From positions 183,884-247,883 of IMG/VR virus record IMGVR_UViG_3300047321_000238: 64,000 nt of DNA, one strand, 5' to 3'. Both the position numbers and the translations under genes were made by a program. Shown one piece after another: positions 5,703-37,844 of this stretch. How positions within the stretch are numbered: position 1 is the stretch's first letter; the number at the start of each line of letters is the position of its first letter. Under the pieces are notes generated by a model. The model was not told where the DNA came from. It saw nothing but the letters and a program-made list of their open reading frames with translations, and did no database searches.

Positions 5703-5712
5703 CATGAAAAAT

Positions 5713-5742
5713 GTTAATAAGGGAAATATTTGTAGTAATATA
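5713..5742 (+). promoter_or_regulatory. Putative phage late promoter for the holin
   Basis: GTTAATA-N15-GTAATATA, a motif that recurs upstream of structural genes. Confidence 0.6.
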
Positions 5743-5772: not shown

Positions 5773-6060
5773 ATGGATTATACTAATTTAGTTAAATTCG
5801 TCCCAGAACAACTATTAATTCTTGTAGCTGCATTAGGTGTGGTTGGGTACTTTGTAAAGAGTACTAACAAAATTCAAGATGCTTATATACCATTTATTTT
5901 AATGGTGTTAGGTGTTGCAGGTTCTTTGTTAATGATGGGGCTTAATGTTACTTCTGTATTACAAGGTATCATTTCTGCCGCAGTTGCCGTTCTTGGTAAT
6001 AATATTGTTAAACAAGGTTCTGAAATATTAGGCACTACAGATACAACAGATGTAAAATAG
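5773..6060 (+). CDS. Phage holin
   Basis: 95 aa with three hydrophobic segments; KIQDAYIPFIL and LQGIISAAVAV patterns typical of Firmicutes phage holins; GGAGG RBS. Confidence 0.85.
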   Translation: MDYTNLVKFVPEQLLILVAALGVVGYFVKSTNKIQDAYIPFILMVLGVAGSLLMMGLNVTSVLQGIISAAVAVLGNNIVKQGSEILGTTDTTDVK

Positions 6061-6066
6061 TTGCAC

Positions 6067-6097
6067 AAAAAGAAGAAGCCGTAATGGCTTCTTTTTC
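6067..6097. terminator. Bidirectional intrinsic terminator
   Basis: AGAAGCC-N5-GGCTTCT stem flanked by A and T tracts between convergent genes. Confidence 0.8.
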
Positions 6098-7020
6098 TAT
6101 TCTACATTACTTTTTGTACGTTGCATCATTGCGTTCTGAATGTTCGCACAGATCAACGTGTTCTCTAATAAACTACACAATGCTAAGTTTACATATTCCC
6201 AAACAGGTAGAACTTTTAAATAAGTTAAATAGTCAAATTTATATTTGTAATCTAGATTGTTATATTGAAGATTTCCATTAATTTTATTTGCACGGTTTTT
6301 ATGAATATCAAGGTCAAAGATATAAGTGGACTTGTTATTTATGCCGTGTATAATTCTTTGTTCTATGTGGTAGTTAACATCGTCTAATAAATCGTATCCT
6401 ATAGAGTTAGCTTTCTTATTAGCTATTAATATAATATTTGAATCATAAAATAAAGATGATAAGTTATGAGTATTATTATTTGCAATTATAATAGTAGACT
6501 TTTCTCTTCTTAATATTTCAGTTAAGTATTTTATATAGTGATTATTATTATCGTCTGTTACTATTAAGACCTTGCTCTTATCTAATGGCACTTTCTCGTA
6601 ACGAAGTAAAGATAAGATACCTTTTGCTATGCACGGTTGTGTAATATCTTCTCTAGTCATTAAAGATCCTACATTAGGAATAGATAAACAATCTACATCT
6701 TTAAAAGGTACAATATTATTCGCAAGGTTTTCATTGGGTGTTTCAAGGATAATGCCGTGAACATTAAAGTCATTATTATACTTATCAATGACTTGTATGG
6801 CCTTCTCCTTATTGTTACTGAACACGTCAACAACATCAAGTTTAATATTGCAATATTCACAATATTGTTTTAACACATCCATATAGTATTTATACTTTGA
6901 ACTTCTAGTTGTTCTTATTATAACTAAAGAGGGGTATACTCTTTGCATTCTTAGCAGACTAGTTCTTATCCTTGCATTCTTTAAAATGTTTTCTATTATT
7001 ATTTTAGTATCAATAATCAT
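6097..7020 (-). CDS. FolD-like (methylene-THF dehydrogenase/cyclohydrolase fold) protein with degenerate catalytic and cofactor motifs
   Basis: FolD landmarks YNNDFNVHGII, PFKDVD, PCIAKGILSLL, IFDLD and LLENT; 307 aa, close to full FolD length. Confidence 0.8.
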   Translation of the reverse strand: MIIDTKIIIENILKNARIRTSLLRMQRVYPSLVIIRTTRSSKYKYYMDVLKQYCEYCNIKLDVVDVFSNNKEKAIQVIDKYNNDFNVHGIILETPNENLANNIVPFKDVDCLSIPNVGSLMTREDITQPCIAKGILSLLRYEKVPLDKSKVLIVTDDNNNHYIKYLTEILRREKSTIIIANNNTHNLSSLFYDSNIILIANKKANSIGYDLLDDVNYHIEQRIIHGINNKSTYIFDLDIHKNRANKINGNLQYNNLDYKYKFDYLTYLKVLPVWEYVNLALCSLLENTLICANIQNAMMQRTKSNVE

Positions 7021-29944: not shown

Positions 29945-29974
29945 TATATTACTACGAAAATTAAGAGTATGTAT
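29945..29974 (-). promoter_or_regulatory. Putative phage late promoter
   Basis: ATACATA-N15-GTAATATA. Confidence 0.5.
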
Positions 29975-29989
29975 ATGCTACATACTCTT
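29963..29989 (-). terminator. Terminator closing the sensor-holin unit
   Basis: 11-bp stem AAGAGTATGTA/TACATACTCTT. Confidence 0.7.
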
Positions 29990-29993
29990 CTTT

Positions 29994-30338
29994 TTACTTT
30001 TGTTTATCGCCAAAATCTGTATCTGAATCATCTAACTTGATACTTTTTGCACTTGCGAATAGTTTTACACCAATCTTTAATACTAGTTTCATTAAGTCAA
30101 ATCCAAAAAGCCCTCCGATTCCAGCAGCAATTGTTAGAGAATTCATATCTGTCCATCCCAAATATTTAGATGCAATTAACGCAAAAATCCACCCACTGAA
30201 TCCATGTAAAATAATTTCTCCAAAAAATATATTAAATGATTCGTTAGTTTTAGATTTATCATTTATCTCCTTAGCTAGAGCTCCAAAAAAAGAGATCATA
30301 AGTGTATATATTATATTGGAGAAGCCGTTGTTATTCAT
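29994..30338 (-). CDS. Holin-like membrane protein
   Basis: Three TM segments (ISFFGALA, ILHGFSGWIFALIA, IAAGIGGLFG) and a charged C-terminal tail. Confidence 0.7.
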   Translation of the reverse strand: MNNNGFSNIIYTLMISFFGALAKEINDKSKTNESFNIFFGEIILHGFSGWIFALIASKYLGWTDMNSLTIAAGIGGLFGFDLMKLVLKIGVKLFASAKSIKLDDSDTDFGDKQK

Positions 30339-30364
30339 TATAGCAGCATCTCCTTTCATACTTA

Positions 30365-31141
30365 TTATACTTTTTTGTTTAGATACACGTATATTATTAA
30401 GTTAAATATACATACAGCTACAGACATCGAAACAAATAACTGCGTTTGTTCGATAGTCTTGTCGATAGTTTCGAAGTTCTTTGTAAATGTGCTTTGAACT
30501 TCGTCTTGTTGTGTCCCCAGAGCGATTAACAATTTACTATACTTTTGATTAGGTATTCCACCCACGGTAATTGGCTCTGCGTTGAAACCAAGTGAACCTG
30601 GAGGTATAACTATCCATTCTAAATATTCTGGTGATCCATCAAAGTTCCACCAATTATTATCTAAAGTAGTTAATGTGCTTTGAGCTAATCTCATTTTATC
30701 TAATATGATTTTAGCTTGTGCTGGATCATAATGCATTCCTGCTTCATCTTTCATGAATCTACCGTTAGTTATAAAATCTGTTTTAGCACAATCGGGACTT
30801 CCATCCCAGATGAATTTTTCATTGCCTAGATTTATCATAAAGGCATCACCTGTATTTCCACCATTTAATACTCCAGATATATTTCTTTTAGCCCACGATT
30901 GTAATGATAGTTCATTAGATGGATCAACTGTTCCATTATTCATATCATACATAAATTGAGCTTCAAGATTAGAGAGAGTTCTTTTTGCTTGTTGTCGCCA
31001 TTCAGTTTCAATATTTGTTTTCAAACTTTCTTTGGTAGATTTTAAACTGTTTACGATACCACTTCCAACAAAAAATATAGTAAGACAAATAACGAATGCA
31101 ATGACATTGATTATATTTTGCATATATCTTTTTTTAAACAT
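30365..31141 (-). CDS. Two-TM membrane protein with an approximately 200-aa extracytoplasmic domain (Cache/PDC-like pattern) and no cytoplasmic output domain
   Basis: Hydrophobic segments near aa 10-30 and 234-253; long helix after TM1; central beta strands DAFMI, FIWD, LEWIVIP and LLIALG. Confidence 0.6.
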   Translation of the reverse strand: MFKKRYMQNIINVIAFVICLTIFFVGSGIVNSLKSTKESLKTNIETEWRQQAKRTLSNLEAQFMYDMNNGTVDPSNELSLQSWAKRNISGVLNGGNTGDAFMINLGNEKFIWDGSPDCAKTDFITNGRFMKDEAGMHYDPAQAKIILDKMRLAQSTLTTLDNNWWNFDGSPEYLEWIVIPPGSLGFNAEPITVGGIPNQKYSKLLIALGTQQDEVQSTFTKNFETIDKTIEQTQLFVSMSVAVCIFNLIIYVYLNKKV

Positions 31142-31176
31142 AGAATAATCTCCTTTCTTATATATTTGACTCGTTA

Positions 31177-31206
31177 TAAATTACTATGATATTCCATTAT
31201 ATTAAC
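31177..31206 (-). promoter_or_regulatory. Putative phage late promoter
   Basis: GTTAATA-N15-GTAATTTA. Confidence 0.6.
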
Positions 31207-31224
31207 ATGGCTTGTACGTAAAAG

Positions 31225-31248
31225 AAAAAAGACTATTGCTAGTCTCAT
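31225..31248 (-). terminator. Intrinsic terminator
   Basis: AGACTA-N4-TAGTCT stem with a T tract on the minus strand; near-identical to 36222-36247. Confidence 0.7.
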
Positions 31249-31249
31249 T

Positions 31250-32395
31250 TTATTCCCAAATTTCGTAAGTAATTGTAGCATTAGCTGGATAAAATCCACT
31301 AGTTGCAGTGATAGTAGTTGAAGTGCAAGTAATATTAGCTACGGATCCAGAGCCAGCCCAAAAAACACCTGATATACTAGGATAAGAATAATGCCCACCA
31401 GACACGGCTGAAGATGTCATATAAATAAAACGTGCTGTAAAAGGCAATGTAAAAGTTGCTGCTGTTGAAGTCACATAATTAAATGTTCCTGTAGCATATC
31501 TTTTCCCACCTAAACTTGCTATTGTCAATGAACCTGTTACTCCGAATATGCTCTTACCACTAGGTATATTACTAGCTATAAAGTTAGCATCATAAGCATA
31601 TACCCAACAATTAGCATCACCACTCCAATATCCTTGAGCTGGCTTTAGGTAAACTGTTCCAACGGCGTTTAATCCAGTACTTATACACGCTTCTTGTTCA
31701 TGTGTAGCCATTATTCCAGTTAGTCCAATTCCATTAGCACTATTAAAAGTAGAACCAGCTAACACTTGAGCTGTAGTTGCAGTACCTGTAGTAGCTGCTA
31801 TTGTTTGTGCTCCACTAAGATATTGATTAGTAGCTATTGTTTGTACCGCGGTGCTTGGATTGTAAGTTTGTGCAGTCTTACTAGACATAGTCCCAACTAA
31901 TCCCGTATCATCATCATTGCTAAAAGTTTTACCAGCTAGAACATTAGCAATTACTGCTGTGCCCTCTGTACTAGCTTTGATAAAAAAATTATCACCACTT
32001 AAGTTGTACCATACGGTATAAGCCTTTCCTAAAATTAAGTTAGGTGCTAAAACTGTATTAGGCTTGTACAAAGGCTTTCCATTAATTGTTGTAGCAACTC
32101 CACCATTACTTGCACTTGCTATAAAAGTTCTATTATAACCATTTGTTAATGTTCCAAAAGTTAAAGTAATAACTGTTCCAGTTCCACCTGCTGTTTCATA
32201 TGCAGAGTCAGATGGCTGAATGGAATTGACAACTACAGTTAAATTATCTAAGTCTAATTGTTTTGCAAAACCAATATTTCCAGAATCAGAGCCAACATAA
32301 AACTCTTCTGTATCAGTAGTGAAAGCTGGCTCGCCTACACTTAATGTAGGAAGATTAGCTTTAGCTCCTCTTTTCATTTGTATTTTTTGACTCAT
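31250..32395 (-). CDS. Tail fibre / receptor-binding protein with an Mtd_N-like N-terminus
   Basis: MSQKIQMKRGAKANLPTLSVGEPAFTTDT; VLAGKTFS...GTM repeats; NIxxGxxIFGVTG; short C-terminal tip domain. Confidence 0.8.
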   Translation of the reverse strand: MSQKIQMKRGAKANLPTLSVGEPAFTTDTEEFYVGSDSGNIGFAKQLDLDNLTVVVNSIQPSDSAYETAGGTGTVITLTFGTLTNGYNRTFIASASNGGVATTINGKPLYKPNTVLAPNLILGKAYTVWYNLSGDNFFIKASTEGTAVIANVLAGKTFSNDDDTGLVGTMSSKTAQTYNPSTAVQTIATNQYLSGAQTIAATTGTATTAQVLAGSTFNSANGIGLTGIMATHEQEACISTGLNAVGTVYLKPAQGYWSGDANCWVYAYDANFIASNIPSGKSIFGVTGSLTIASLGGKRYATGTFNYVTSTAATFTLPFTARFIYMTSSAVSGGHYSYPSISGVFWAGSGSVANITCTSTTITATSGFYPANATITYEIWE

Positions 32396-32415: not shown

Positions 32416-34107
32416 TTATCCAATTGCAAACCAAGAACACAGATGAGAACCATTCGACGTATATATTGGTAATGTAAATCCAGTACTTGATATAACTACT
32501 GGTGACGTATCTCCTCTCATGCAATAAGTTCCATATCCAGTATTACCTCCACTATCGTTAGTGTTCGAAAACGACCTAACTATAGCTCCAGCATATACTG
32601 GATCAGGTAATATTTTTTCATATATTGTAGAATAGGTCAGCGTAGTACCATCACGATATTTTAATGATATAAAAGTCGGCAAAAATGTCAAACCTGTTAC
32701 AGTTGCAGTAGCCATATATACTAGATTTCCATATACTGTAGTAAAAGCAATAGCACTTGCAGAAGATGTAACAGTACCACTTGCAAAATTTAAACCACCC
32801 ATATTTGCTGCTGTTGCTGTACCAATTACTCCAAATATATTTTTACCAGTTACTATATTAGCAGCTACTAACTCTGCTTCAGCAGCTTGAAGTTGTGTTG
32901 TTGGAACTTTTACTTCTGAAGATCCTCCTCCTGATCCAGAGAGATAGTAACCTGATTGAGCTAAATAAACTGCTAAAGCTCCATCGCCCCATTGAGAACA
33001 TGAACTTGATATATTAGCGGCTCCTATAGTTGCCATTGTTCCAGTAATTTTATTTCCATTTACATATGCAGTTTGACTTGCTAATATTTGTGGAGCTGTT
33101 GCAGTTGCATCGGAAGTGTAAGTCCCTGCTACATAATGTCCACTCCATCCAGCTTGTGCTCCTGCTTTTATATTACTAGGATATAGATTTGGAATATGAA
33201 TTCTTGATAAAGAACTTCCATTGTAATATCCTTCTGGAATATACATGTCCCATGCTCCAACTGACGTATTAGATGTGGCTCCTCCGCATAAAGCAGCACT
33301 TGCAGTAAATGCATCTATTGCAGAAGAACCTATTATTGTTCCAGATTTATTAACCATAGTACCTGTTAATTGTGCTCCATCTACAAATGCAATTTGACTT
33401 GCTAGTATCTGTGCTGCAGTTGCAGTACCAGGACTGGTATCAACAACATTACTATTTCCTGCTAATCCAAATACTGAAACTCCTGATTTTATATTAGTTG
33501 AAATAAAATTGCTATCAATAACTTGTGTGTTAGTTCCAGCTACTCCATCGTAATATCCAATTTTAGGACGAACATTTAACAGACCAGATCCATCAGTAAA
33601 AATAGCATCTGCTGTTGTTATTGTTCCAGTTCTATCTATCATAGTTCCAGTTAATCCTACATCACTATCATTGCTAAATGTTTTACTCGCTAGTACTTGA
33701 GAAGCAATTACATCTCCTTCAGCACTAGCTACACAAAAAAAACAACTACTTGCAGAATTGTACCAAATAGAATACGCCTTCCCAGCTACTAAATTCGGAG
33801 CTGTTGTTGTATTAGGTTTGTATAATGGATAGGTTGCATTAATAGTCGTTGCTGAACCACCATTATTAATATTTGCTATAAACTTTTTAGAATATCCACT
33901 TGTTAAAGTTCCAAGAGTTAGTATCATAGCAGTGCCTGTTCCACTCGCTGTTTCGTAAATCATTTCAGATTCTTTTATATATCGTATATTGCTTGTACCA
34001 TTGCCGACATATAAATCATTACTATCAGTAGTGAAAGCGGGTTCGCCTATACTTAACGTAGGAAGATTTGCTTTAGTACCACGTTTGAATAATATTTTTT
34101 GACTCAT
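32416..34107 (-). CDS. Tail fibre / receptor-binding protein with an Mtd_N-like N-terminus
   Basis: Same N-terminus; ATAxQILASQxA(F/Y)V repeats; VTGLTFLP tip domain. Confidence 0.8.
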   Translation of the reverse strand: MSQKILFKRGTKANLPTLSIGEPAFTTDSNDLYVGNGTSNIRYIKESEMIYETASGTGTAMILTLGTLTSGYSKKFIANINNGGSATTINATYPLYKPNTTTAPNLVAGKAYSIWYNSASSCFFCVASAEGDVIASQVLASKTFSNDSDVGLTGTMIDRTGTITTADAIFTDGSGLLNVRPKIGYYDGVAGTNTQVIDSNFISTNIKSGVSVFGLAGNSNVVDTSPGTATAAQILASQIAFVDGAQLTGTMVNKSGTIIGSSAIDAFTASAALCGGATSNTSVGAWDMYIPEGYYNGSSLSRIHIPNLYPSNIKAGAQAGWSGHYVAGTYTSDATATAPQILASQTAYVNGNKITGTMATIGAANISSSCSQWGDGALAVYLAQSGYYLSGSGGGSSEVKVPTTQLQAAEAELVAANIVTGKNIFGVIGTATAANMGGLNFASGTVTSSASAIAFTTVYGNLVYMATATVTGLTFLPTFISLKYRDGTTLTYSTIYEKILPDPVYAGAIVRSFSNTNDSGGNTGYGTYCMRGDTSPVVISSTGFTLPIYTSNGSHLCSWFAIG

Positions 34108-34778: not shown

Positions 34779-36149
34779 TTATTCATAAGCAAACCAGTTA
34801 CAAGCATTTTGTGCAACGCTAAAAGGCAATATAAAACCAGTAGAAGTTACACTTGCATGTGTAGTATCAGCTCTAAAAGCGGTTGTACCCATTGATAATG
34901 TTCCAGTATTTGTTGCAAAGCATTCAACAGTACTTCCAGCATAGTTAGAACTATAACCAGCAGACATATATAAAGTTCTCCACGAGTTACCTGCTGTTTT
35001 TGATATTATAAGTATTATTGATGGTAAAAAAGTTAAACCAGTTACTGTAACTGGCCAAGCAGCAGCAGTACCACTAGATATATATGCAAATGAAGATGAT
35101 GATGCTGCTGATGTTGCTGTACCACTTGCCATCTGCTTACCTCCTAAACTTGATACCGTTGCAGTTCCTGCTAATCCAAATATATTTGCAGTACTTAATA
35201 TGTTTGAAGCTATATAGTCAGCATCACTTTTATAAAGCCAAACATTGGTATCGTAATATCCTTTTGGCACATTATAAAATAAAGAATGTGTACCTAACCA
35301 AGTACTCAACGCTTCAAATCTTGCAGTAGTAGCTGCATCATCACCCAAGCCAGCATGACTTGCATCTGATACCATAGTTGTTCTATCAACAATATTTCCA
35401 GTTATTAAACTTCCATTTACATAACCAGTTTTCCCACTTAGTATTTGTGCAGCTGTTGCCGTTGCACTGCTTGTTTCTACTACGCTTGTTTTACCTGCAA
35501 CTCCAAATATATTAGCACCAGCTTTTATATTGGCAGATACTAAATCAGGATCACCTAATATAGTTTGTACATCACCAAGATATTGTCCTGCCGCTATAGT
35601 TTGATTAACTGTATTTGGAGTATAAGTTTGTGCAGTTTTAGTAGTAATTGTTCCTGTAATTTGTCCACTATTTACTGTAGCTGTTGCTGGAGCTAATATT
35701 TGAGCTGCTGTAGCTGTTCCACCTGTACTTGTACCACCACCTCCTTTACCCTGTAATATAAAAGAATTAGATACACTTTCATATCTTAAGTTTACGATTA
35801 AATTTAATCTTACATCAGTAACTGCTGCTCCTGAGTAGTCTAAAATACTTACATCGCCTAAAGTATTTACATTTAAAGTAATTGCTCCAGTACTAGCAGC
35901 ATTAAATTTAATAACAAAAAGATGGCCATCAGTTAATGTAATTATATTAGGTATAGTAACTGTATATGCATTTCCAGAATTAGTAGTTATATATACTGTA
36001 TTAATGTCAGAATCTTTTGCAATCCTTATATTGCTTGTGCCATTTCCTATATATATATCTTCTGTGTCTGTAGTGAAAGCAGGCTCTCCTGTATTTAACA
36101 TAGGAAGATTAATTTTAGTACCTCTTTTAAACAATATTTTTTGACTCAT
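34779..36149 (-). CDS. Tail fibre / receptor-binding protein with an Mtd_N-like N-terminus
   Basis: MSQKILFKRGTK...GEPAFTTDT; FILQGKGGG linker; tip domain paralogous to 32416-34107. Confidence 0.8.
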   Translation of the reverse strand: MSQKILFKRGTKINLPMLNTGEPAFTTDTEDIYIGNGTSNIRIAKDSDINTVYITTNSGNAYTVTIPNIITLTDGHLFVIKFNAASTGAITLNVNTLGDVSILDYSGAAVTDVRLNLIVNLRYESVSNSFILQGKGGGGTSTGGTATAAQILAPATATVNSGQITGTITTKTAQTYTPNTVNQTIAAGQYLGDVQTILGDPDLVSANIKAGANIFGVAGKTSVVETSSATATAAQILSGKTGYVNGSLITGNIVDRTTMVSDASHAGLGDDAATTARFEALSTWLGTHSLFYNVPKGYYDTNVWLYKSDADYIASNILSTANIFGLAGTATVSSLGGKQMASGTATSAASSSSFAYISSGTAAAWPVTVTGLTFLPSIILIISKTAGNSWRTLYMSAGYSSNYAGSTVECFATNTGTLSMGTTAFRADTTHASVTSTGFILPFSVAQNACNWFAYE

Positions 36150-36179
36150 ATTATCAAACCCCTTCTAAATCACTCATTA

Positions 36180-36209
36180 TAAATTACTTATATTACATAA
36201 GTTATTAAC
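36180..36209 (-). promoter_or_regulatory. Putative phage late promoter
   Basis: GTTAATA-N15-GTAATTTA, with a second GTAATATA inside the spacer. Confidence 0.6.
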
Positions 36210-36221
36210 ATAATTTTCTTT

Positions 36222-36247
36222 AAAAAAAAGACTATCGCTAGTCTTTT
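36222..36247 (-). terminator. Intrinsic terminator
   Basis: AAAAGACTA-TCGC-TAGTCTTTT. Confidence 0.75.
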
Positions 36248-36260
36248 AATCATTCTCAAA

Positions 36261-37844
36261 TTAGAATGTTCCACCATCTATTGTTGCGATAATTGCAGCT
36301 ATTGAAATATTTGCAGTACCATCAAAACTTGTAGCTGTCCCTGTAACATCTCCACTTATAGCTATAGTTCTTGCAGTAACTAACTTTGTAGTTGAAGTAG
36401 CATTGCCACTAAATGCAGGAGCAGTTACTGTACCTGTAAATATTGGTGAAGCTAATGGAGCTTTTAAAGCTAATTGATTTGTCATAGTTGTAGAGAAGTT
36501 AGCGTCATTACCTAAAGCAGTTGCAAGTTCATTTAATGTATCTAAAGTAGCGGGAGCTGTATTAACTAAATTAGCAACAGTAGTAGCTACGAAAGCAGTT
36601 GTCGCTAATTGTGTAGTGTTTGTACCTACAGTTGCTGTTGGTGCTGCTGGAGCTCCAGTGAATATTGGTGACACTAAAGGTGCTCTTGTTGCATCAATAG
36701 GATGGACATGATCTTGTCTTGAATATAAATATGAAGTACCTACCGCAACTGTTCCATTTACTAATGGACTTGCAGTACCAACTTGTCCTAATACAAATTG
36801 AGTTGTTGCAACTTGTGTTGTGTTAGTATTTACTGCAGCAGTTGGAGCAACAGGAGTTCCTGTAAATGTTGGAGTTGTAAACATAACTGTTTTAGATTCA
36901 TTAGTTACATTTCCTAATCCCATATTTGAAGCAGAAATTAAATTAGTCCAAGCTCCCCATGCTGAAGTTATATAATTTCTTTTGTATATAACGTTAACAT
37001 CATCTGGATACCATAGTTGAAATGGAATAGCAGTATCAAAATCTACAACTAATCTACCAGTATCAGTAGTAGCTGCATTTGTATTTGATCCTACTGTGAA
37101 ATCAAATATTCCAGTAGTCATTAAAGTATTAAAATCTGTAACTGCGGTATACTTAGCTTTATATACTGCATCTGTAATAGAGTATCCTGCAATTGTAGTA
37201 GGATTTGCTCCTACTGTAACTCTGCCTTTTGCATCTACAGTAATTTTAGTATAAGTACCAGCAGTTACTCCAGAGCTTGATAAAACTAAAGGTATTGTTA
37301 CATTTACAGTTCCATCAAAAACTACAGAACCTGTAGCATCTCCAGAAGTTGCAATTGTTCTAGCAGTAGTTAATTTGTTAGCAGTTGCAACAGTTCCAGA
37401 AACTGCACTTGATACAGCACTAGTAACGAAAGCAGTTGTTGCTAACTGTGTTGTATTTGTTCCAACTGTAGCTGTAGGTGCTGCTGGTATTCCAGTAAAT
37501 GCAGGAGAAACTAATGGAGATTTTAAATCTAAAGCGGTTTGTAATCCAGTTACAGTTGATATCGTATGATTATGACTGTCATCAACTACAGTAGCTACAA
37601 TAGATACATTAGAACCTCCATCAAAATTTGCAGTACCTGTTACATCTCCAGATATTGCAATAGCTCTTGCAGTGCTAAGTTTATCAGCAGCTACATATGA
37701 GTCTGGATTTATTAGTATTTTGCTTGCACCATTTCCGATATATAATTTATTAGTATCGGTAGTGAAAGCTGGTTCAGAAGTGTTTAAGGATATAGCACCA
37801 ATATTAGTACTAAGACCTCTTCTTAACAATATTGTTTGTGGCAT
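36261..37844 (-). CDS. Tail fibre shaft protein (Mtd_N-like start, ends IDGGTF)
   Basis: KLxTARxIAxSGDxTG and PTAxVxTNTTQxATTxFV repeats; APATLDTLNELATALGND. Confidence 0.8.
   Translation of the reverse strand: MPQTILLRRGLSTNIGAISLNTSEPAFTTDTNKLYIGNGASKILINPDSYVAADKLSTARAIAISGDVTGTANFDGGSNVSIVATVVDDSHNHTISTVTGLQTALDLKSPLVSPAFTGIPAAPTATVGTNTTQLATTAFVTSAVSSAVSGTVATANKLTTARTIATSGDATGSVVFDGTVNVTIPLVLSSSGVTAGTYTKITVDAKGRVTVGANPTTIAGYSITDAVYKAKYTAVTDFNTLMTTGIFDFTVGSNTNAATTDTGRLVVDFDTAIPFQLWYPDDVNVIYKRNYITSAWGAWTNLISASNMGLGNVTNESKTVMFTTPTFTGTPVAPTAAVNTNTTQVATTQFVLGQVGTASPLVNGTVAVGTSYLYSRQDHVHPIDATRAPLVSPIFTGAPAAPTATVGTNTTQLATTAFVATTVANLVNTAPATLDTLNELATALGNDANFSTTMTNQLALKAPLASPIFTGTVTAPAFSGNATSTTKLVTARTIAISGDVTGTATSFDGTANISIAAIIATIDGGTF

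What the first reader, a model, noticed from the sequence alone, without database searches (positions are those of the whole stretch)
29963..31248. Stand-alone unit pairing an orphan extracellular sensor-like protein with a holin: candidate environment-sensing lysis timer
Seen: two genes bounded by an upstream terminator, their own putative late promoter (31177-31206) and a downstream terminator (29963-29989), inserted among the fibre genes. Gene 1 (258 aa) has a TM helix at each end, about 200 aa between them and only a few basic residues inside the cell. Gene 2 is a three-TM holin-like protein. Established: TM, long helix, central beta sheet, TM is the layout of Cache/PDC sensor modules in chemoreceptors and histidine kinases, which normally carry a cytoplasmic output domain. 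T4 RI/T shows that holins can be gated from outside the membrane. Inference: with no output domain, this protein could signal only through the membrane, plausibly to the co-transcribed holin as a ligand-responsive antiholin. A second, unrelated holin lies at 5773-6060, so this one may be specialised.
Basis: partly seen in the sequence, partly recalled or inferred. Interest (0 to 1): 0.8.

Follow-up and report, generated by a model that had tools for sequence, protein, structure and literature searches.

The report
Sensor-fold membrane protein paired with holin
A jumbo phage carries a two-gene late operon in which a membrane protein shaped like the outside-facing sensor part of bacterial receptors, but with nothing on the inside, sits directly upstream of a hole-forming lysis protein. 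The same pair recurs in very distant phages, including the laboratory phages AR9 and PBS1, so it is a real, undescribed and testable lysis-module partner whose function is still unknown.

Summary
Gene 1 (30365-31141, minus strand, 258 aa) and gene 2 (29994-30338/30359, minus strand) are real genes. They are bounded by two hairpin terminators and preceded by a bipartite motif that occurs only three times in the 248-kb genome.

Gene 1 has one transmembrane (TM) helix at each end, with roughly 8 and 5 residues in the cytoplasm. Its AlphaFold2 model (pLDDT 86) matches Cache/PDC sensor modules of histidine kinases and chemoreceptors in four independent searches. No Pfam Cache model is hit by sequence.

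Gene 2 is a three-helix LydA-type holin. Its start is more likely M8, giving 114 aa.

In 13 independent lineages the gene 1 homologue is followed:
- by this holin family in 9, including Bacillus phages AR9/PBS1 and BpSp;
- by another small membrane protein in 3;
- directly by an M23 peptidase in 1.

An endolysin of three different classes follows in three lineages. In AR9, published RNA-seq shows both genes are late and have their own late start site.

No family member carries an output domain. The family is essentially absent from bacterial genomes.

What is supported is a holin-linked, output-less sensor-fold protein. The ligand-responsive antiholin reading is untested. I found no description of such a pair in the literature.

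The parts
31219..31246 (-). Upstream intrinsic-terminator-like hairpin (7-bp stem, 4-nt loop) plus U-run, ending the preceding fibre-like gene
   Evidence: Fold -7 kcal/mol, z -2.75. A near-identical hairpin recurs at about 36222-36247.
31180..31207 (-). Bipartite promoter-like motif TGTTAATA-N13-AGTAAT
   Evidence: Three copies in the 248-kb genome against 0.04 expected in the window. All are upstream of start codons on the coding strand, and one precedes the other holin gene. The whole intergenic block is 76% identical to 36150-36263.
31150..31157 (-). Shine-Dalgarno sequence (GAAAGGAG) of gene 1, 8 nt before the ATG
   Evidence: Read from the sequence.
30365..31141 (-). Gene 1: 258-aa bitopic membrane protein (N-in, C-in) with an extracytoplasmic single Cache/PDC-like domain and no cytoplasmic output domain; phrog_23473
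   Evidence: ORF. TM helices. AF2 model pLDDT 86.4, pTM 0.77. Fold matches. Family of 154 clusters at 50% identity.
30350..30356 (-). Shine-Dalgarno sequence (AAAGGAG) serving the ATG at 30338 of gene 2
   Evidence: Read from the sequence. Homologues start at the equivalent Met.
29994..30338 (-). Gene 2: 114-aa three-helix LydA-type holin (the open frame extends to an ATG at 30359, giving 121 aa)
   Evidence: phrog_6384 holin, E 5e-10. PF16083 at 17.7 bits, below the cut-off, but precomputed PF16083 hits on 5 homologues. AF2 model has three helices. Nearest viral models are the PBS1 holin and LydA-like holins. An endolysin lies directly downstream in L002 and L005.
29963..29989 (-). Downstream terminator hairpin (11-bp stem) closing the two-gene unit
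   Evidence: -13.8 kcal/mol, z -6.2.

Best explanation
Gene 1 and gene 2 form a conserved, late, two-gene lysis module.

Shown:
- Gene 2 is a LydA-type three-helix holin.
- Gene 1 is a phage-specific membrane protein. Its about 200 extracytoplasmic residues adopt the single Cache/PDC sensor fold, held between two TM helices that leave fewer than about 10 residues in the cytoplasm.
- The gene pair is conserved and is associated with endolysins.
- In AR9 the pair is co-expressed late.

Inferred:
- Because gene 1 has no transmitter domain, it can act only within or outside the membrane.
- The most likely action is on the co-translated holin, through helix-helix contacts. A change in the ectodomain, by ligand binding or a change in dimer state, would shift its two TM helices as in sensor kinases. 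That would change how readily the holin oligomerises, and so tune the time of lysis.
- The sign of the effect (delay or trigger) and the cue are unknown.
For: Fold:
- AF2 model pLDDT 86.4.
- Foldseek against AFDB clusters: the named top hits are mostly Cache, histidine-kinase, chemoreceptor or HAMP sensors; best E 1.6e-9, TM 0.71.
- Swiss-Prot models: ZraS, WalK, DcuS, CitA and chemoreceptors.
- VIA-align: Z 9-11 over residues about 33-229 to solved Cache ligand-binding domains 9hvj, 3ub6, 4wy9, 4k08, 4ywz and 4jgo.
- ESM Atlas: 0.96 to sCache_2 clusters.

No output domain:
- 103 of 118 members keep both terminal TM helices, with a median of 10 residues before the first helix and about 16 after the second. 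No Pfam domain is found in any member.

Linkage:
- The same holin family lies directly downstream in the window, L009, L008, L005, L002, BpSp, AR9, L011 and L014.
- Holin homologues lie on contigs of the same lengths as those carrying gene 1 homologues.
- An endolysin follows in L002 (M15_3), L005 (Amidase_3) and L013 (Amidase_2).
- In L002 the two genes overlap.

Timing:
- In AR9 the membrane protein reads 0.98, 8.3 and 628 at 5, 20 and 40 min, and the holin reads 2.3, 26 and 2701. A late start site lies 44 nt upstream of the membrane-protein gene (PMC5312081 supplements).

Window:
- Terminators on both sides and a shared promoter-like motif.

Conservation:
- Scaffold residues and an acidic cluster after strand 2 (D99, D113, S115, D117) are kept in 60% or more of 118 members. 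The rest of that region varies between subfamilies, as in sensor domains.
Against: - No experiment bears on the function of any member.
- No Cache Pfam model matches by sequence. Foldseek against solved structures gives only weak PAS hits.
- The holin exposes only about 8 and about 10 residues outside the membrane, so any coupling must be within the membrane, and this could not be modelled here.
- In L006 the homologue is followed directly by an M23 peptidase, with no holin-like protein nearby. In L012, L013 and L015 the downstream membrane protein is not detectably of the same holin family.
- Known antiholins are usually dispensable and poorly conserved, whereas this partner is strongly conserved. 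That fits an essential co-factor at least as well as a regulator.
- In the window's phage the endolysin lies about 60 kb away, and a second holin exists.
Confidence: 0.5

Rival explanations
1. Gene 1 is an obligatory structural partner of the holin, as in the two-component holins of Bacillus phages, and does no sensing. The two proteins together would form or position the membrane lesion, and the ectodomain would serve only as a scaffold or wall contact.
For: - The pairing is strict and ancient, at 22-25% identity between subfamilies.
- The genes are translationally close or overlapping.
- Two membrane proteins are needed for lysis in Bacillus thuringiensis phage Deep-Purple (PMC9327680) and in mycobacteriophages (PMC13056207).
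- The high conservation fits a required component.
Against: - Known co-holins are small and lack a folded ectodomain.
- The fold is specifically that of ligand-binding sensor modules.
- The conserved acidic cluster lies where Cache domains bind ligands (the position is from general knowledge of the fold).
- L006 has no holin next to the homologue.
Confidence: 0.2
2. Gene 1 acts on the host, not on the holin. As a kinase-less copy of a sensor module it could pair with host Cache-type sensors such as WalK-like kinases and disturb cell-wall homeostasis late in infection. Alternatively it could act as a superinfection-exclusion or receptor-masking protein.
For: - The fold resembles the TM-sensor-TM part of WalK, KinD, DcuS and CitA.
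- In the window it lies among fibre-like genes.
- A weak SieB hit occurs in one of 118 members.
Against: - There is no sequence similarity to any cellular sensor: the profile search found only family members of similar length (190-440 aa for near-full-length hits), with no room for a kinase or other output domain.
- Only one of 185,579 species genomes holds a homologue, on a phage-like contig.
- Expression in AR9 is very late, with the holin, whereas exclusion genes are typically early.
- Linkage to holins and endolysins holds in every lineage examined.
Confidence: 0.13
3. The ectodomain is a wall-binding or enzymatic helper of the endolysin. It would tether or activate the peptidoglycan hydrolase at the outer face of the membrane, independently of the holin.
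For: - In L006 and L007 the gene overlaps an M23 peptidase gene, with no holin between them.
- In L005 peptidoglycan-hydrolase genes flank the pair.
- Many polar residues are invariant within the window's subfamily, including D99, D113, S115, D117, C118, R128, E133 and H137.
Against: - Most of those residues are not kept in the AR9 and BpSp subfamily, which argues against a conserved catalytic site.
- No hydrolase fold was matched.
- In the jumbo phages the endolysin is far from the pair.
Confidence: 0.1

Closest known systems
Bacillus phage AR9 gp080 (g081 in the transcriptome paper) with holin gp081, and the PBS1 and vB_BpuM-BpSp (gp152/gp153) equivalents
   Same: - Direct homologues of both genes in the same order: hhalign probability 99.6% and E 1e-23 for gene 1; 36-40% identity for the holin.
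- The PBS1 model is the best viral fold match, TM 0.80.
- Late co-expression in AR9.
   Different: - They are annotated only as hypothetical or membrane proteins, and no function is known.
- They are about 60 aa longer through an insertion after strand 2, and the acidic pocket motif is largely replaced.
- Those phages encode their own multisubunit RNA polymerases, whereas the window's phage has no detectable beta subunit.
Cache/PDC extracytoplasmic sensor modules of histidine kinases and chemoreceptors (for example WalK, DcuS/CitA, ZraS, TlpB, Adeh_3718)
   Same: TM helix, long stalk helix, PAS-like alpha/beta core, C-terminal helix and second TM helix.
   Different: - There is no HAMP, kinase, chemoreceptor or cyclase output domain in any member.
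- No Pfam Cache model matches.
- The family is phage-restricted and is linked to a holin.
Phage T4 RI antiholin acting on holin T (lysis inhibition)
   Different: RI has a single releasable N-terminal anchor and a small helical periplasmic domain that binds the large periplasmic domain of T. Here the partner has two TM helices and a Cache-like fold, and the holin has almost no exposed loops, so any coupling must be intramembrane. There is no homology.
Two-membrane-protein holin systems of Gram-positive phages (PBSX XhlA/XhlB, SPP1 gp24.1/gp26, Deep-Purple HolP30/HolP33, mycobacteriophage LysF1a/LysF1b)
   Same: Two co-transcribed membrane proteins in or near the lysis cassette that together set lysis (PMC9327680, PMC13056207).
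   Different: Those partners are small, or have a cytoplasmic extension, and none has a folded sensor-type ectodomain between two TM helices. There is no sequence relation.
WalH/WalI (YycH/YycI) regulators of WalK in Bacillus
   Same: They are a precedent, recalled from memory, for membrane-anchored proteins with only an extracytoplasmic domain that control a partner through TM-helix contacts.
   Different: They are host proteins with a single TM helix and a different fold, and their target is a kinase. They were not tested here.

Membership tests
Cache superfamily (extracytoplasmic PAS-like sensors; Pfam clan of sCache/dCache families) | Extracytoplasmic location between two TM helices | tested here: met
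   TM helices at about 10-28 and 235-253, with basic residues at both short ends. 103 of 118 members keep both helices.
Cache superfamily (extracytoplasmic PAS-like sensors; Pfam clan of sCache/dCache families) | Long N-terminal stalk helix followed by a PAS-like alpha/beta core | tested here: met
   AF2 model: helix 2-68; strands 100-104, 109-112, 172-179, short strands near 192-197, and 204-211; helix 220-257. Z 9-11 to solved Cache ligand-binding domains. TM 0.71 to an AFDB Cache protein.
Cache superfamily (extracytoplasmic PAS-like sensors; Pfam clan of sCache/dCache families) | Significant match to a Cache-family sequence model | tested here: not met
   No Cache family at E <= 0.01 in any of 118 members. 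A profile search against PDB sequences found nothing. Only language-model features point to sCache_2 and sCache_3.
Cache superfamily (extracytoplasmic PAS-like sensors; Pfam clan of sCache/dCache families) | Cytoplasmic transmitter (kinase, chemoreceptor, cyclase and the like) on the same chain | tested here: not met
   Cytoplasmic ends have medians of about 10 and 16 residues, and no Pfam domain is found.
Cache superfamily (extracytoplasmic PAS-like sensors; Pfam clan of sCache/dCache families) | Binds a small ligand in the pocket over the sheet | not testable with these tools
   There is only a conserved acidic cluster, D99/D113/S115/D117.
Holins, superfamily III (LydA-like, PF16083; phrog_6384) | Small protein with TM helices and a charged C-terminal tail | tested here: met
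   114 aa, with helices at 5-28, 35-59 and 65-97, then a tail rich in Asp and Lys.
Holins, superfamily III (LydA-like, PF16083; phrog_6384) | Match to a family model | tested here: inconclusive
   phrog_6384 holin, E 5e-10. PF16083 at E 0.004 and 17.7 bits, below the 28.4-bit cut-off. Five close homologues carry precomputed PF16083 hits. Fold neighbours are LydA-like holins.
Holins, superfamily III (LydA-like, PF16083; phrog_6384) | Genetic linkage to an endolysin | tested here: met
   Not in the window, where the endolysin lies about 60 kb away. Holin-family homologues in L002 and L005 are followed directly by an endolysin; in L013 a small TM protein of uncertain family is followed by Amidase_2.
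Holins, superfamily III (LydA-like, PF16083; phrog_6384) | Timed, lethal membrane permeabilisation | not testable with these tools
   This needs expression in cells.
Antiholins (T4 RI, lambda S107, P1 LydB) | Binds the cognate holin and delays triggering | not testable with these tools
   No complex prediction or experiment was possible. Only co-transcription and conserved adjacency are shown.
Antiholins (T4 RI, lambda S107, P1 LydB) | Sequence or fold relation to a known antiholin | tested here: not met
   No such hit in Pfam, PHROGs, NCBIfam or the BFVD and PDB fold searches.

The most novel reading that the evidence does not exclude
The pair is a ligand-gated lysis clock of phages of Gram-positive bacteria. 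The Cache-like ectodomain would read a cue in the wall space, such as muropeptides released by neighbouring lysed cells, a cation, or an incoming superinfecting phage. It would pass the signal through its two TM helices to the LydA-type holin, delaying or triggering lysis. This would be a functional analogue of T4 lysis inhibition, built from a kinase-less sensor module.
Probability: 0.2. Interest if true: 0.85.

Novelty: new variant of a known kind. Interest (0 to 1): 0.66.

Why it matters
How phages of Gram-positive bacteria set the time of lysis, and whether they can adjust it to outside conditions, is poorly understood. Holin regulators with an external input are known in detail essentially only for T4.

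This family provides a concrete candidate. It has the most widespread bacterial extracellular sensor fold, stripped of any output and welded genetically to a holin. It is conserved from 35-kb contigs to 270-kb jumbo phages, and even in a phage that reads TGA as glycine.

Homologues exist in AR9 and PBS1, which grow on Bacillus subtilis 168, so the hypothesis can be tested directly by deletion, co-expression and ligand screening. Even if the protein turns out to be a structural co-holin, it would define a new class of holin partner and give names to a few hundred hypothetical proteins.

Tried and rejected
- Pfam, NCBIfam and PADLOC scans of gene 1 gave nothing meaningful. The DUF3169 and PtuB hits are noise over TM or short stretches.
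- A profile search against PDB sequences found nothing.
- Foldseek against solved structures gave only weak PAS and GAF hits, E >= 0.03. The Cache assignment therefore rests on the AFDB, VIA-align and ESM Atlas searches.
- Megablast of the region against phage records found no match.
- IMG/VR and GTDB scans each returned a single locus, so contexts had to be taken from metagenome contigs.
- The AR9 late-promoter motif AACA-N6-TR is barely enriched upstream of genes here (1.4-fold). The genome has no detectable RNA polymerase beta subunit, so AR9's promoter logic cannot be transferred.
- A sigma-70 consensus scan is no better than shuffles.
- The loose motif AGTAATWTWWWWW is not enriched. Only the bipartite form is.
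- The 210-aa gene downstream of the terminator has no family hit and is not related to the 224-aa gene in the same position of L008. I do not count it as part of the unit.
- No paralogue of gene 1 exists in the genome.
I rebuilt the alignment without that sequence.
- Complex prediction of the pair was not possible with the tools.
Full report
**What is in the sequence**

On the minus strand, a 258-aa ORF (30365-31141) is followed after 26 nt by a holin-like ORF.
- The longest frame of the second ORF starts at 30359, giving 121 aa. That ATG has no ribosome-binding site.
- AAAGGAG (30350-30356) precedes the ATG at 30338, and 19 of 20 homologues begin at the equivalent Met. I therefore take gene 2 as 29994-30338, 114 aa.
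- Gene 1 has its own GAAAGGAG 8 nt before its ATG.

The pair is bracketed by two hairpin terminators.
- Downstream: an 11-bp hairpin at 29963-29989, -13.8 kcal/mol, z -6.2.
- Upstream: a 7-bp hairpin plus U-run at 31219-31246, -7 kcal/mol, z -2.75.

**The promoter claim**

A sigma-70 consensus scan finds no more sites than shuffles do. The late-promoter motif of phage AR9 is barely enriched upstream of genes in this genome (1.4-fold).

The 108-nt spacer upstream of gene 1 is, however, 76% identical to the spacer at 36150-36263. The two share the terminator hairpin and a bipartite element.

The element, TGTTAATA-N13-AGTAAT, occurs exactly three times in the window and in the whole 247,883-bp genome, against 0.04 expected in the window. 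Every copy is on the coding strand, 30-40 nt upstream of a start codon. The three genes it precedes are:
- gene 1;
- the fibre-like gene 34779-36149;
- the second holin at 5773-6060.

Its activity and timing are not shown.

**Gene 1**

Hydropathy gives TM helices at about 10-28 and 235-253. The cytoplasmic ends are only MFKKRYMQ and NKKV.

Sequence libraries give only phrog_23473, of unknown function.

With a 24-sequence alignment, AlphaFold2 gives a confident model, pLDDT 86.4 and pTM 0.77. Its elements in order are:
- one continuous helix, 2-68;
- a short helix;
- two strands;
- a flexible loop, 117-120;
- helices;
- three further strands;
- a helix, 220-257, that packs back against the first.

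Four independent comparisons identify this as the TM-Cache/PDC-TM sensor module.
- Foldseek against AlphaFold DB clusters: best hit is a 315-aa "Cache domain-containing protein" (E 1.6e-9, TM 0.71), followed mostly by histidine kinases, chemoreceptors with Cache sensors and HAMP proteins.
- Swiss-Prot models: ZraS, WalK, MctS, DcuS, CitA and CtpM.
- VIA-align against 48,161 solved chains: Z 9-11 over residues about 33-229 to Cache ligand-binding domains 9hvj, 3ub6, 4wy9, 6mni, 4k08, 3li8, 4ywz (WalK), 4jgo (KinD) and others. These are interleaved with uninformative long-helix matches.
- ESM Atlas language-model features: 0.96 to sCache_2 clusters.

Foldseek against solved structures alone is weak. 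No Cache Pfam model is hit in any of 118 family members. The relation is therefore at the level of fold, not demonstrable sequence homology.

**The family**

An exhaustive profile search finds 154 clusters at 50% identity.
- 103 of 118 aligned members keep both terminal TM helices. A median of about 10 residues precedes the first and about 16 follow the second. None carries a Pfam domain. The lack of an output domain is therefore a family trait, not a truncation.
- Only one of 185,579 species genomes holds a homologue, on a phage-like contig of a Clostridia MAG.
- Only one IMG/VR contig was retrieved.
- Across the family the best-kept positions are E45, R49, K/R53 and L56 in the stalk helix; D99, D113, S115 and D117 on and after strands 1-2; and E172, L174, E175, P180, G185, N198 and E214.
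- The window's subfamily has many more invariant polar residues. The AR9 and BpSp subfamily replaces most of these. This pattern is expected of a sensor scaffold with a variable pocket rather than of an enzyme. That reading is an inference.

**Gene 2**

- It matches phrog_6384 "holin" (E 5e-10) and, below threshold, Pfam LydA holin.
- Five close homologues carry precomputed PF16083 hits.
- Its AF2 model (pLDDT 84) has three helices, 5-28, 35-59 and 65-97, then a charged tail.
- Its nearest viral models are the PBS1 holin and LydA-like holins.
- Conserved features include a glycine-rich third helix and polar residues in helix 2.

**Gene neighbourhood**

I examined 13 independent lineages.

| Gene directly downstream of the gene 1 homologue | Lineages |
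|---|---|
| Same holin family | Window; L009 (236-kb IMG/VR contig); L008; L005; L002-4; Bacillus phage BpSp (gp152/gp153); AR9 (gp080/gp081, hhalign 99.6%); L011 (270-kb contig); L014 |
| Another small membrane protein | L012; L013; L015 |
| An overlapping M23 peptidase gene | L006 and L007 |

- An endolysin follows the small membrane protein in three lineages, and it is of a different enzyme class each time: Peptidase_M15_3, Amidase_3 with PG_binding_1, and Amidase_2.
- Holin homologues found independently lie on contigs of the same lengths as those carrying the gene 1 homologues.
- All eight phage records with a holin hit are AR9/PBS1-like phages or BpSp. The partner was confirmed upstream in AR9 and BpSp, and a PBS1 homologue appears in BFVD.

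The pair is therefore an old, mobile two-gene module of lysis cassettes. Its position varies between genomes: among fibre genes here, next to RNA polymerase and protease genes in AR9.

**Experimental anchor**

In the AR9 transcriptome (PMC5312081), supplementary tables list g081 "hypothetical membrane protein" at 0.98, 8.27 and 628 and g082 "putative holin" at 2.33, 26.3 and 2701, at 5, 20 and 40 min. They also list a late start site at 66651, 44 nt upstream of the membrane-protein gene, with an AACA-N6-TA motif. The paper's numbering is one higher than RefSeq's. This shows late co-expression of the orthologous pair. It says nothing about function.

**Genome context of the window**

- The phage is a complete 248-kb genome with direct terminal repeats and 30.5% G+C.
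- It has no detectable RNA polymerase beta subunit, so it is not an AR9-type phage despite sharing the module.
- Its endolysin lies about 60 kb away. It is 439 aa, with glucosaminidase, Amidase_3 and choline-binding-type repeats, which points to a Gram-positive host.
- A second, unrelated holin (phrog_1129, E 5e-25) is at 5773-6060.

**Interpretation**

Shown:
- a sensor-fold ectodomain between two TM helices;
- no output domain anywhere in the family;
- restriction to phages;
- conserved adjacency and co-transcription with a LydA-type holin and with endolysins;
- late expression in AR9.

Inferred: the protein works with or on the holin inside the membrane. The holin exposes only about 8 and about 10 residues outside, so a T4 RI-style contact between ectodomains is unlikely. 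Coupling would be helix to helix, in the way sensor kinases move their TM helices.

Whether it delays lysis (antiholin), promotes it (co-holin or activator) or is ligand-controlled at all cannot be decided here. The strong conservation fits a required partner at least as well as a dispensable regulator.

My weights are about:
- 0.5 for a holin-coupled regulator of lysis timing. Within this, a ligand-gated lysis clock in either direction is about 0.2.
- 0.2 for a non-sensing co-holin.
- 0.13 for a host-directed or exclusion role.
- 0.1 for an endolysin or wall helper.

**Novelty**

Full-text searches found nothing relevant. They combined Cache domain, PAS-like or sensor domain with holin, phage or lysis; antiholin with extracellular domain and lysis cassette; and stand-alone Cache domains. 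The AR9, PBS1 and BpSp proteins are annotated as hypothetical.

I class the finding as a new variant of a known kind: holin plus a membrane partner, with an unprecedented sensor-type partner. It is readily testable in B. subtilis with AR9 or PBS1.

Noticed in passing
window 5712-5739 (+), 31180-31207 (-), 36183-36210 (-): The bipartite motif TGTTAATA-N13-AGTAAT occurs only three times in the 248-kb genome. The copies lie upstream of the second holin, of the gene 1/holin pair and of a fibre-like gene. Both holin genes thus seem to share one regulatory signal, possibly a very-late promoter class.
   Followed up: partly
window 36150-36263 versus 31142-31252: Two intergenic spacers are 76% identical. 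They share the hairpin AGACTAGCRATAGTCTTTTTT and the promoter-like block, and look like a reused terminator-promoter cassette.
   Followed up: partly
L013 2577-4061 (Logan contig from SRR13225480): This homologous locus is full of in-frame TGA codons that align with conserved glycines; for example, the conserved DGSPDC motif reads D-TGA-SPDC. That indicates genetic code 25, a phage of Gracilibacteria or Absconditabacteria. The order there is homologue, a 105-aa membrane protein, then Amidase_2.
   Followed up: partly
window 5773-6060 (+): A second holin (phrog_1129, E 5e-25) stands alone on the opposite strand between unrelated genes, next to a FolD-like gene at 6097-7020. The lysis genes of this phage are scattered.
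   Followed up: partly
G000:C1:152745-154064 (L010 1015-2334), outside the window: The likely endolysin is a 439-aa three-part protein: an N-terminal glucosaminidase or FlgJ-like domain, Amidase_3, and C-terminal choline-binding-type repeats. This hints at a host with choline-decorated or similar wall polymers.
   Followed up: partly
window 31250-32395 and 32416-34107 (-): Two adjacent fibre-like genes share an Mtd_N-type N-terminus (MSQKI..KRG.KANLPTLS.GEPAFTTD) with divergent C-terminal parts. The gene at 34779-36149 starts the same way. This looks like a set of paralogous receptor-binding proteins.
   Followed up: no
L006 5001-6348 and L007: In this lineage the Cache-like gene overlaps a Peptidase_M23 gene, and no holin-like membrane protein lies within 4 kb. 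This is an exception to the holin pairing and may say something about the protein's real partner.
   Followed up: partly
whole genome (G000): No RNA polymerase beta-subunit domain (PF00562) was detected in this 248-kb phage, unlike AR9, BpSp and the L011 contig, which carry the same holin module.
   Followed up: partly
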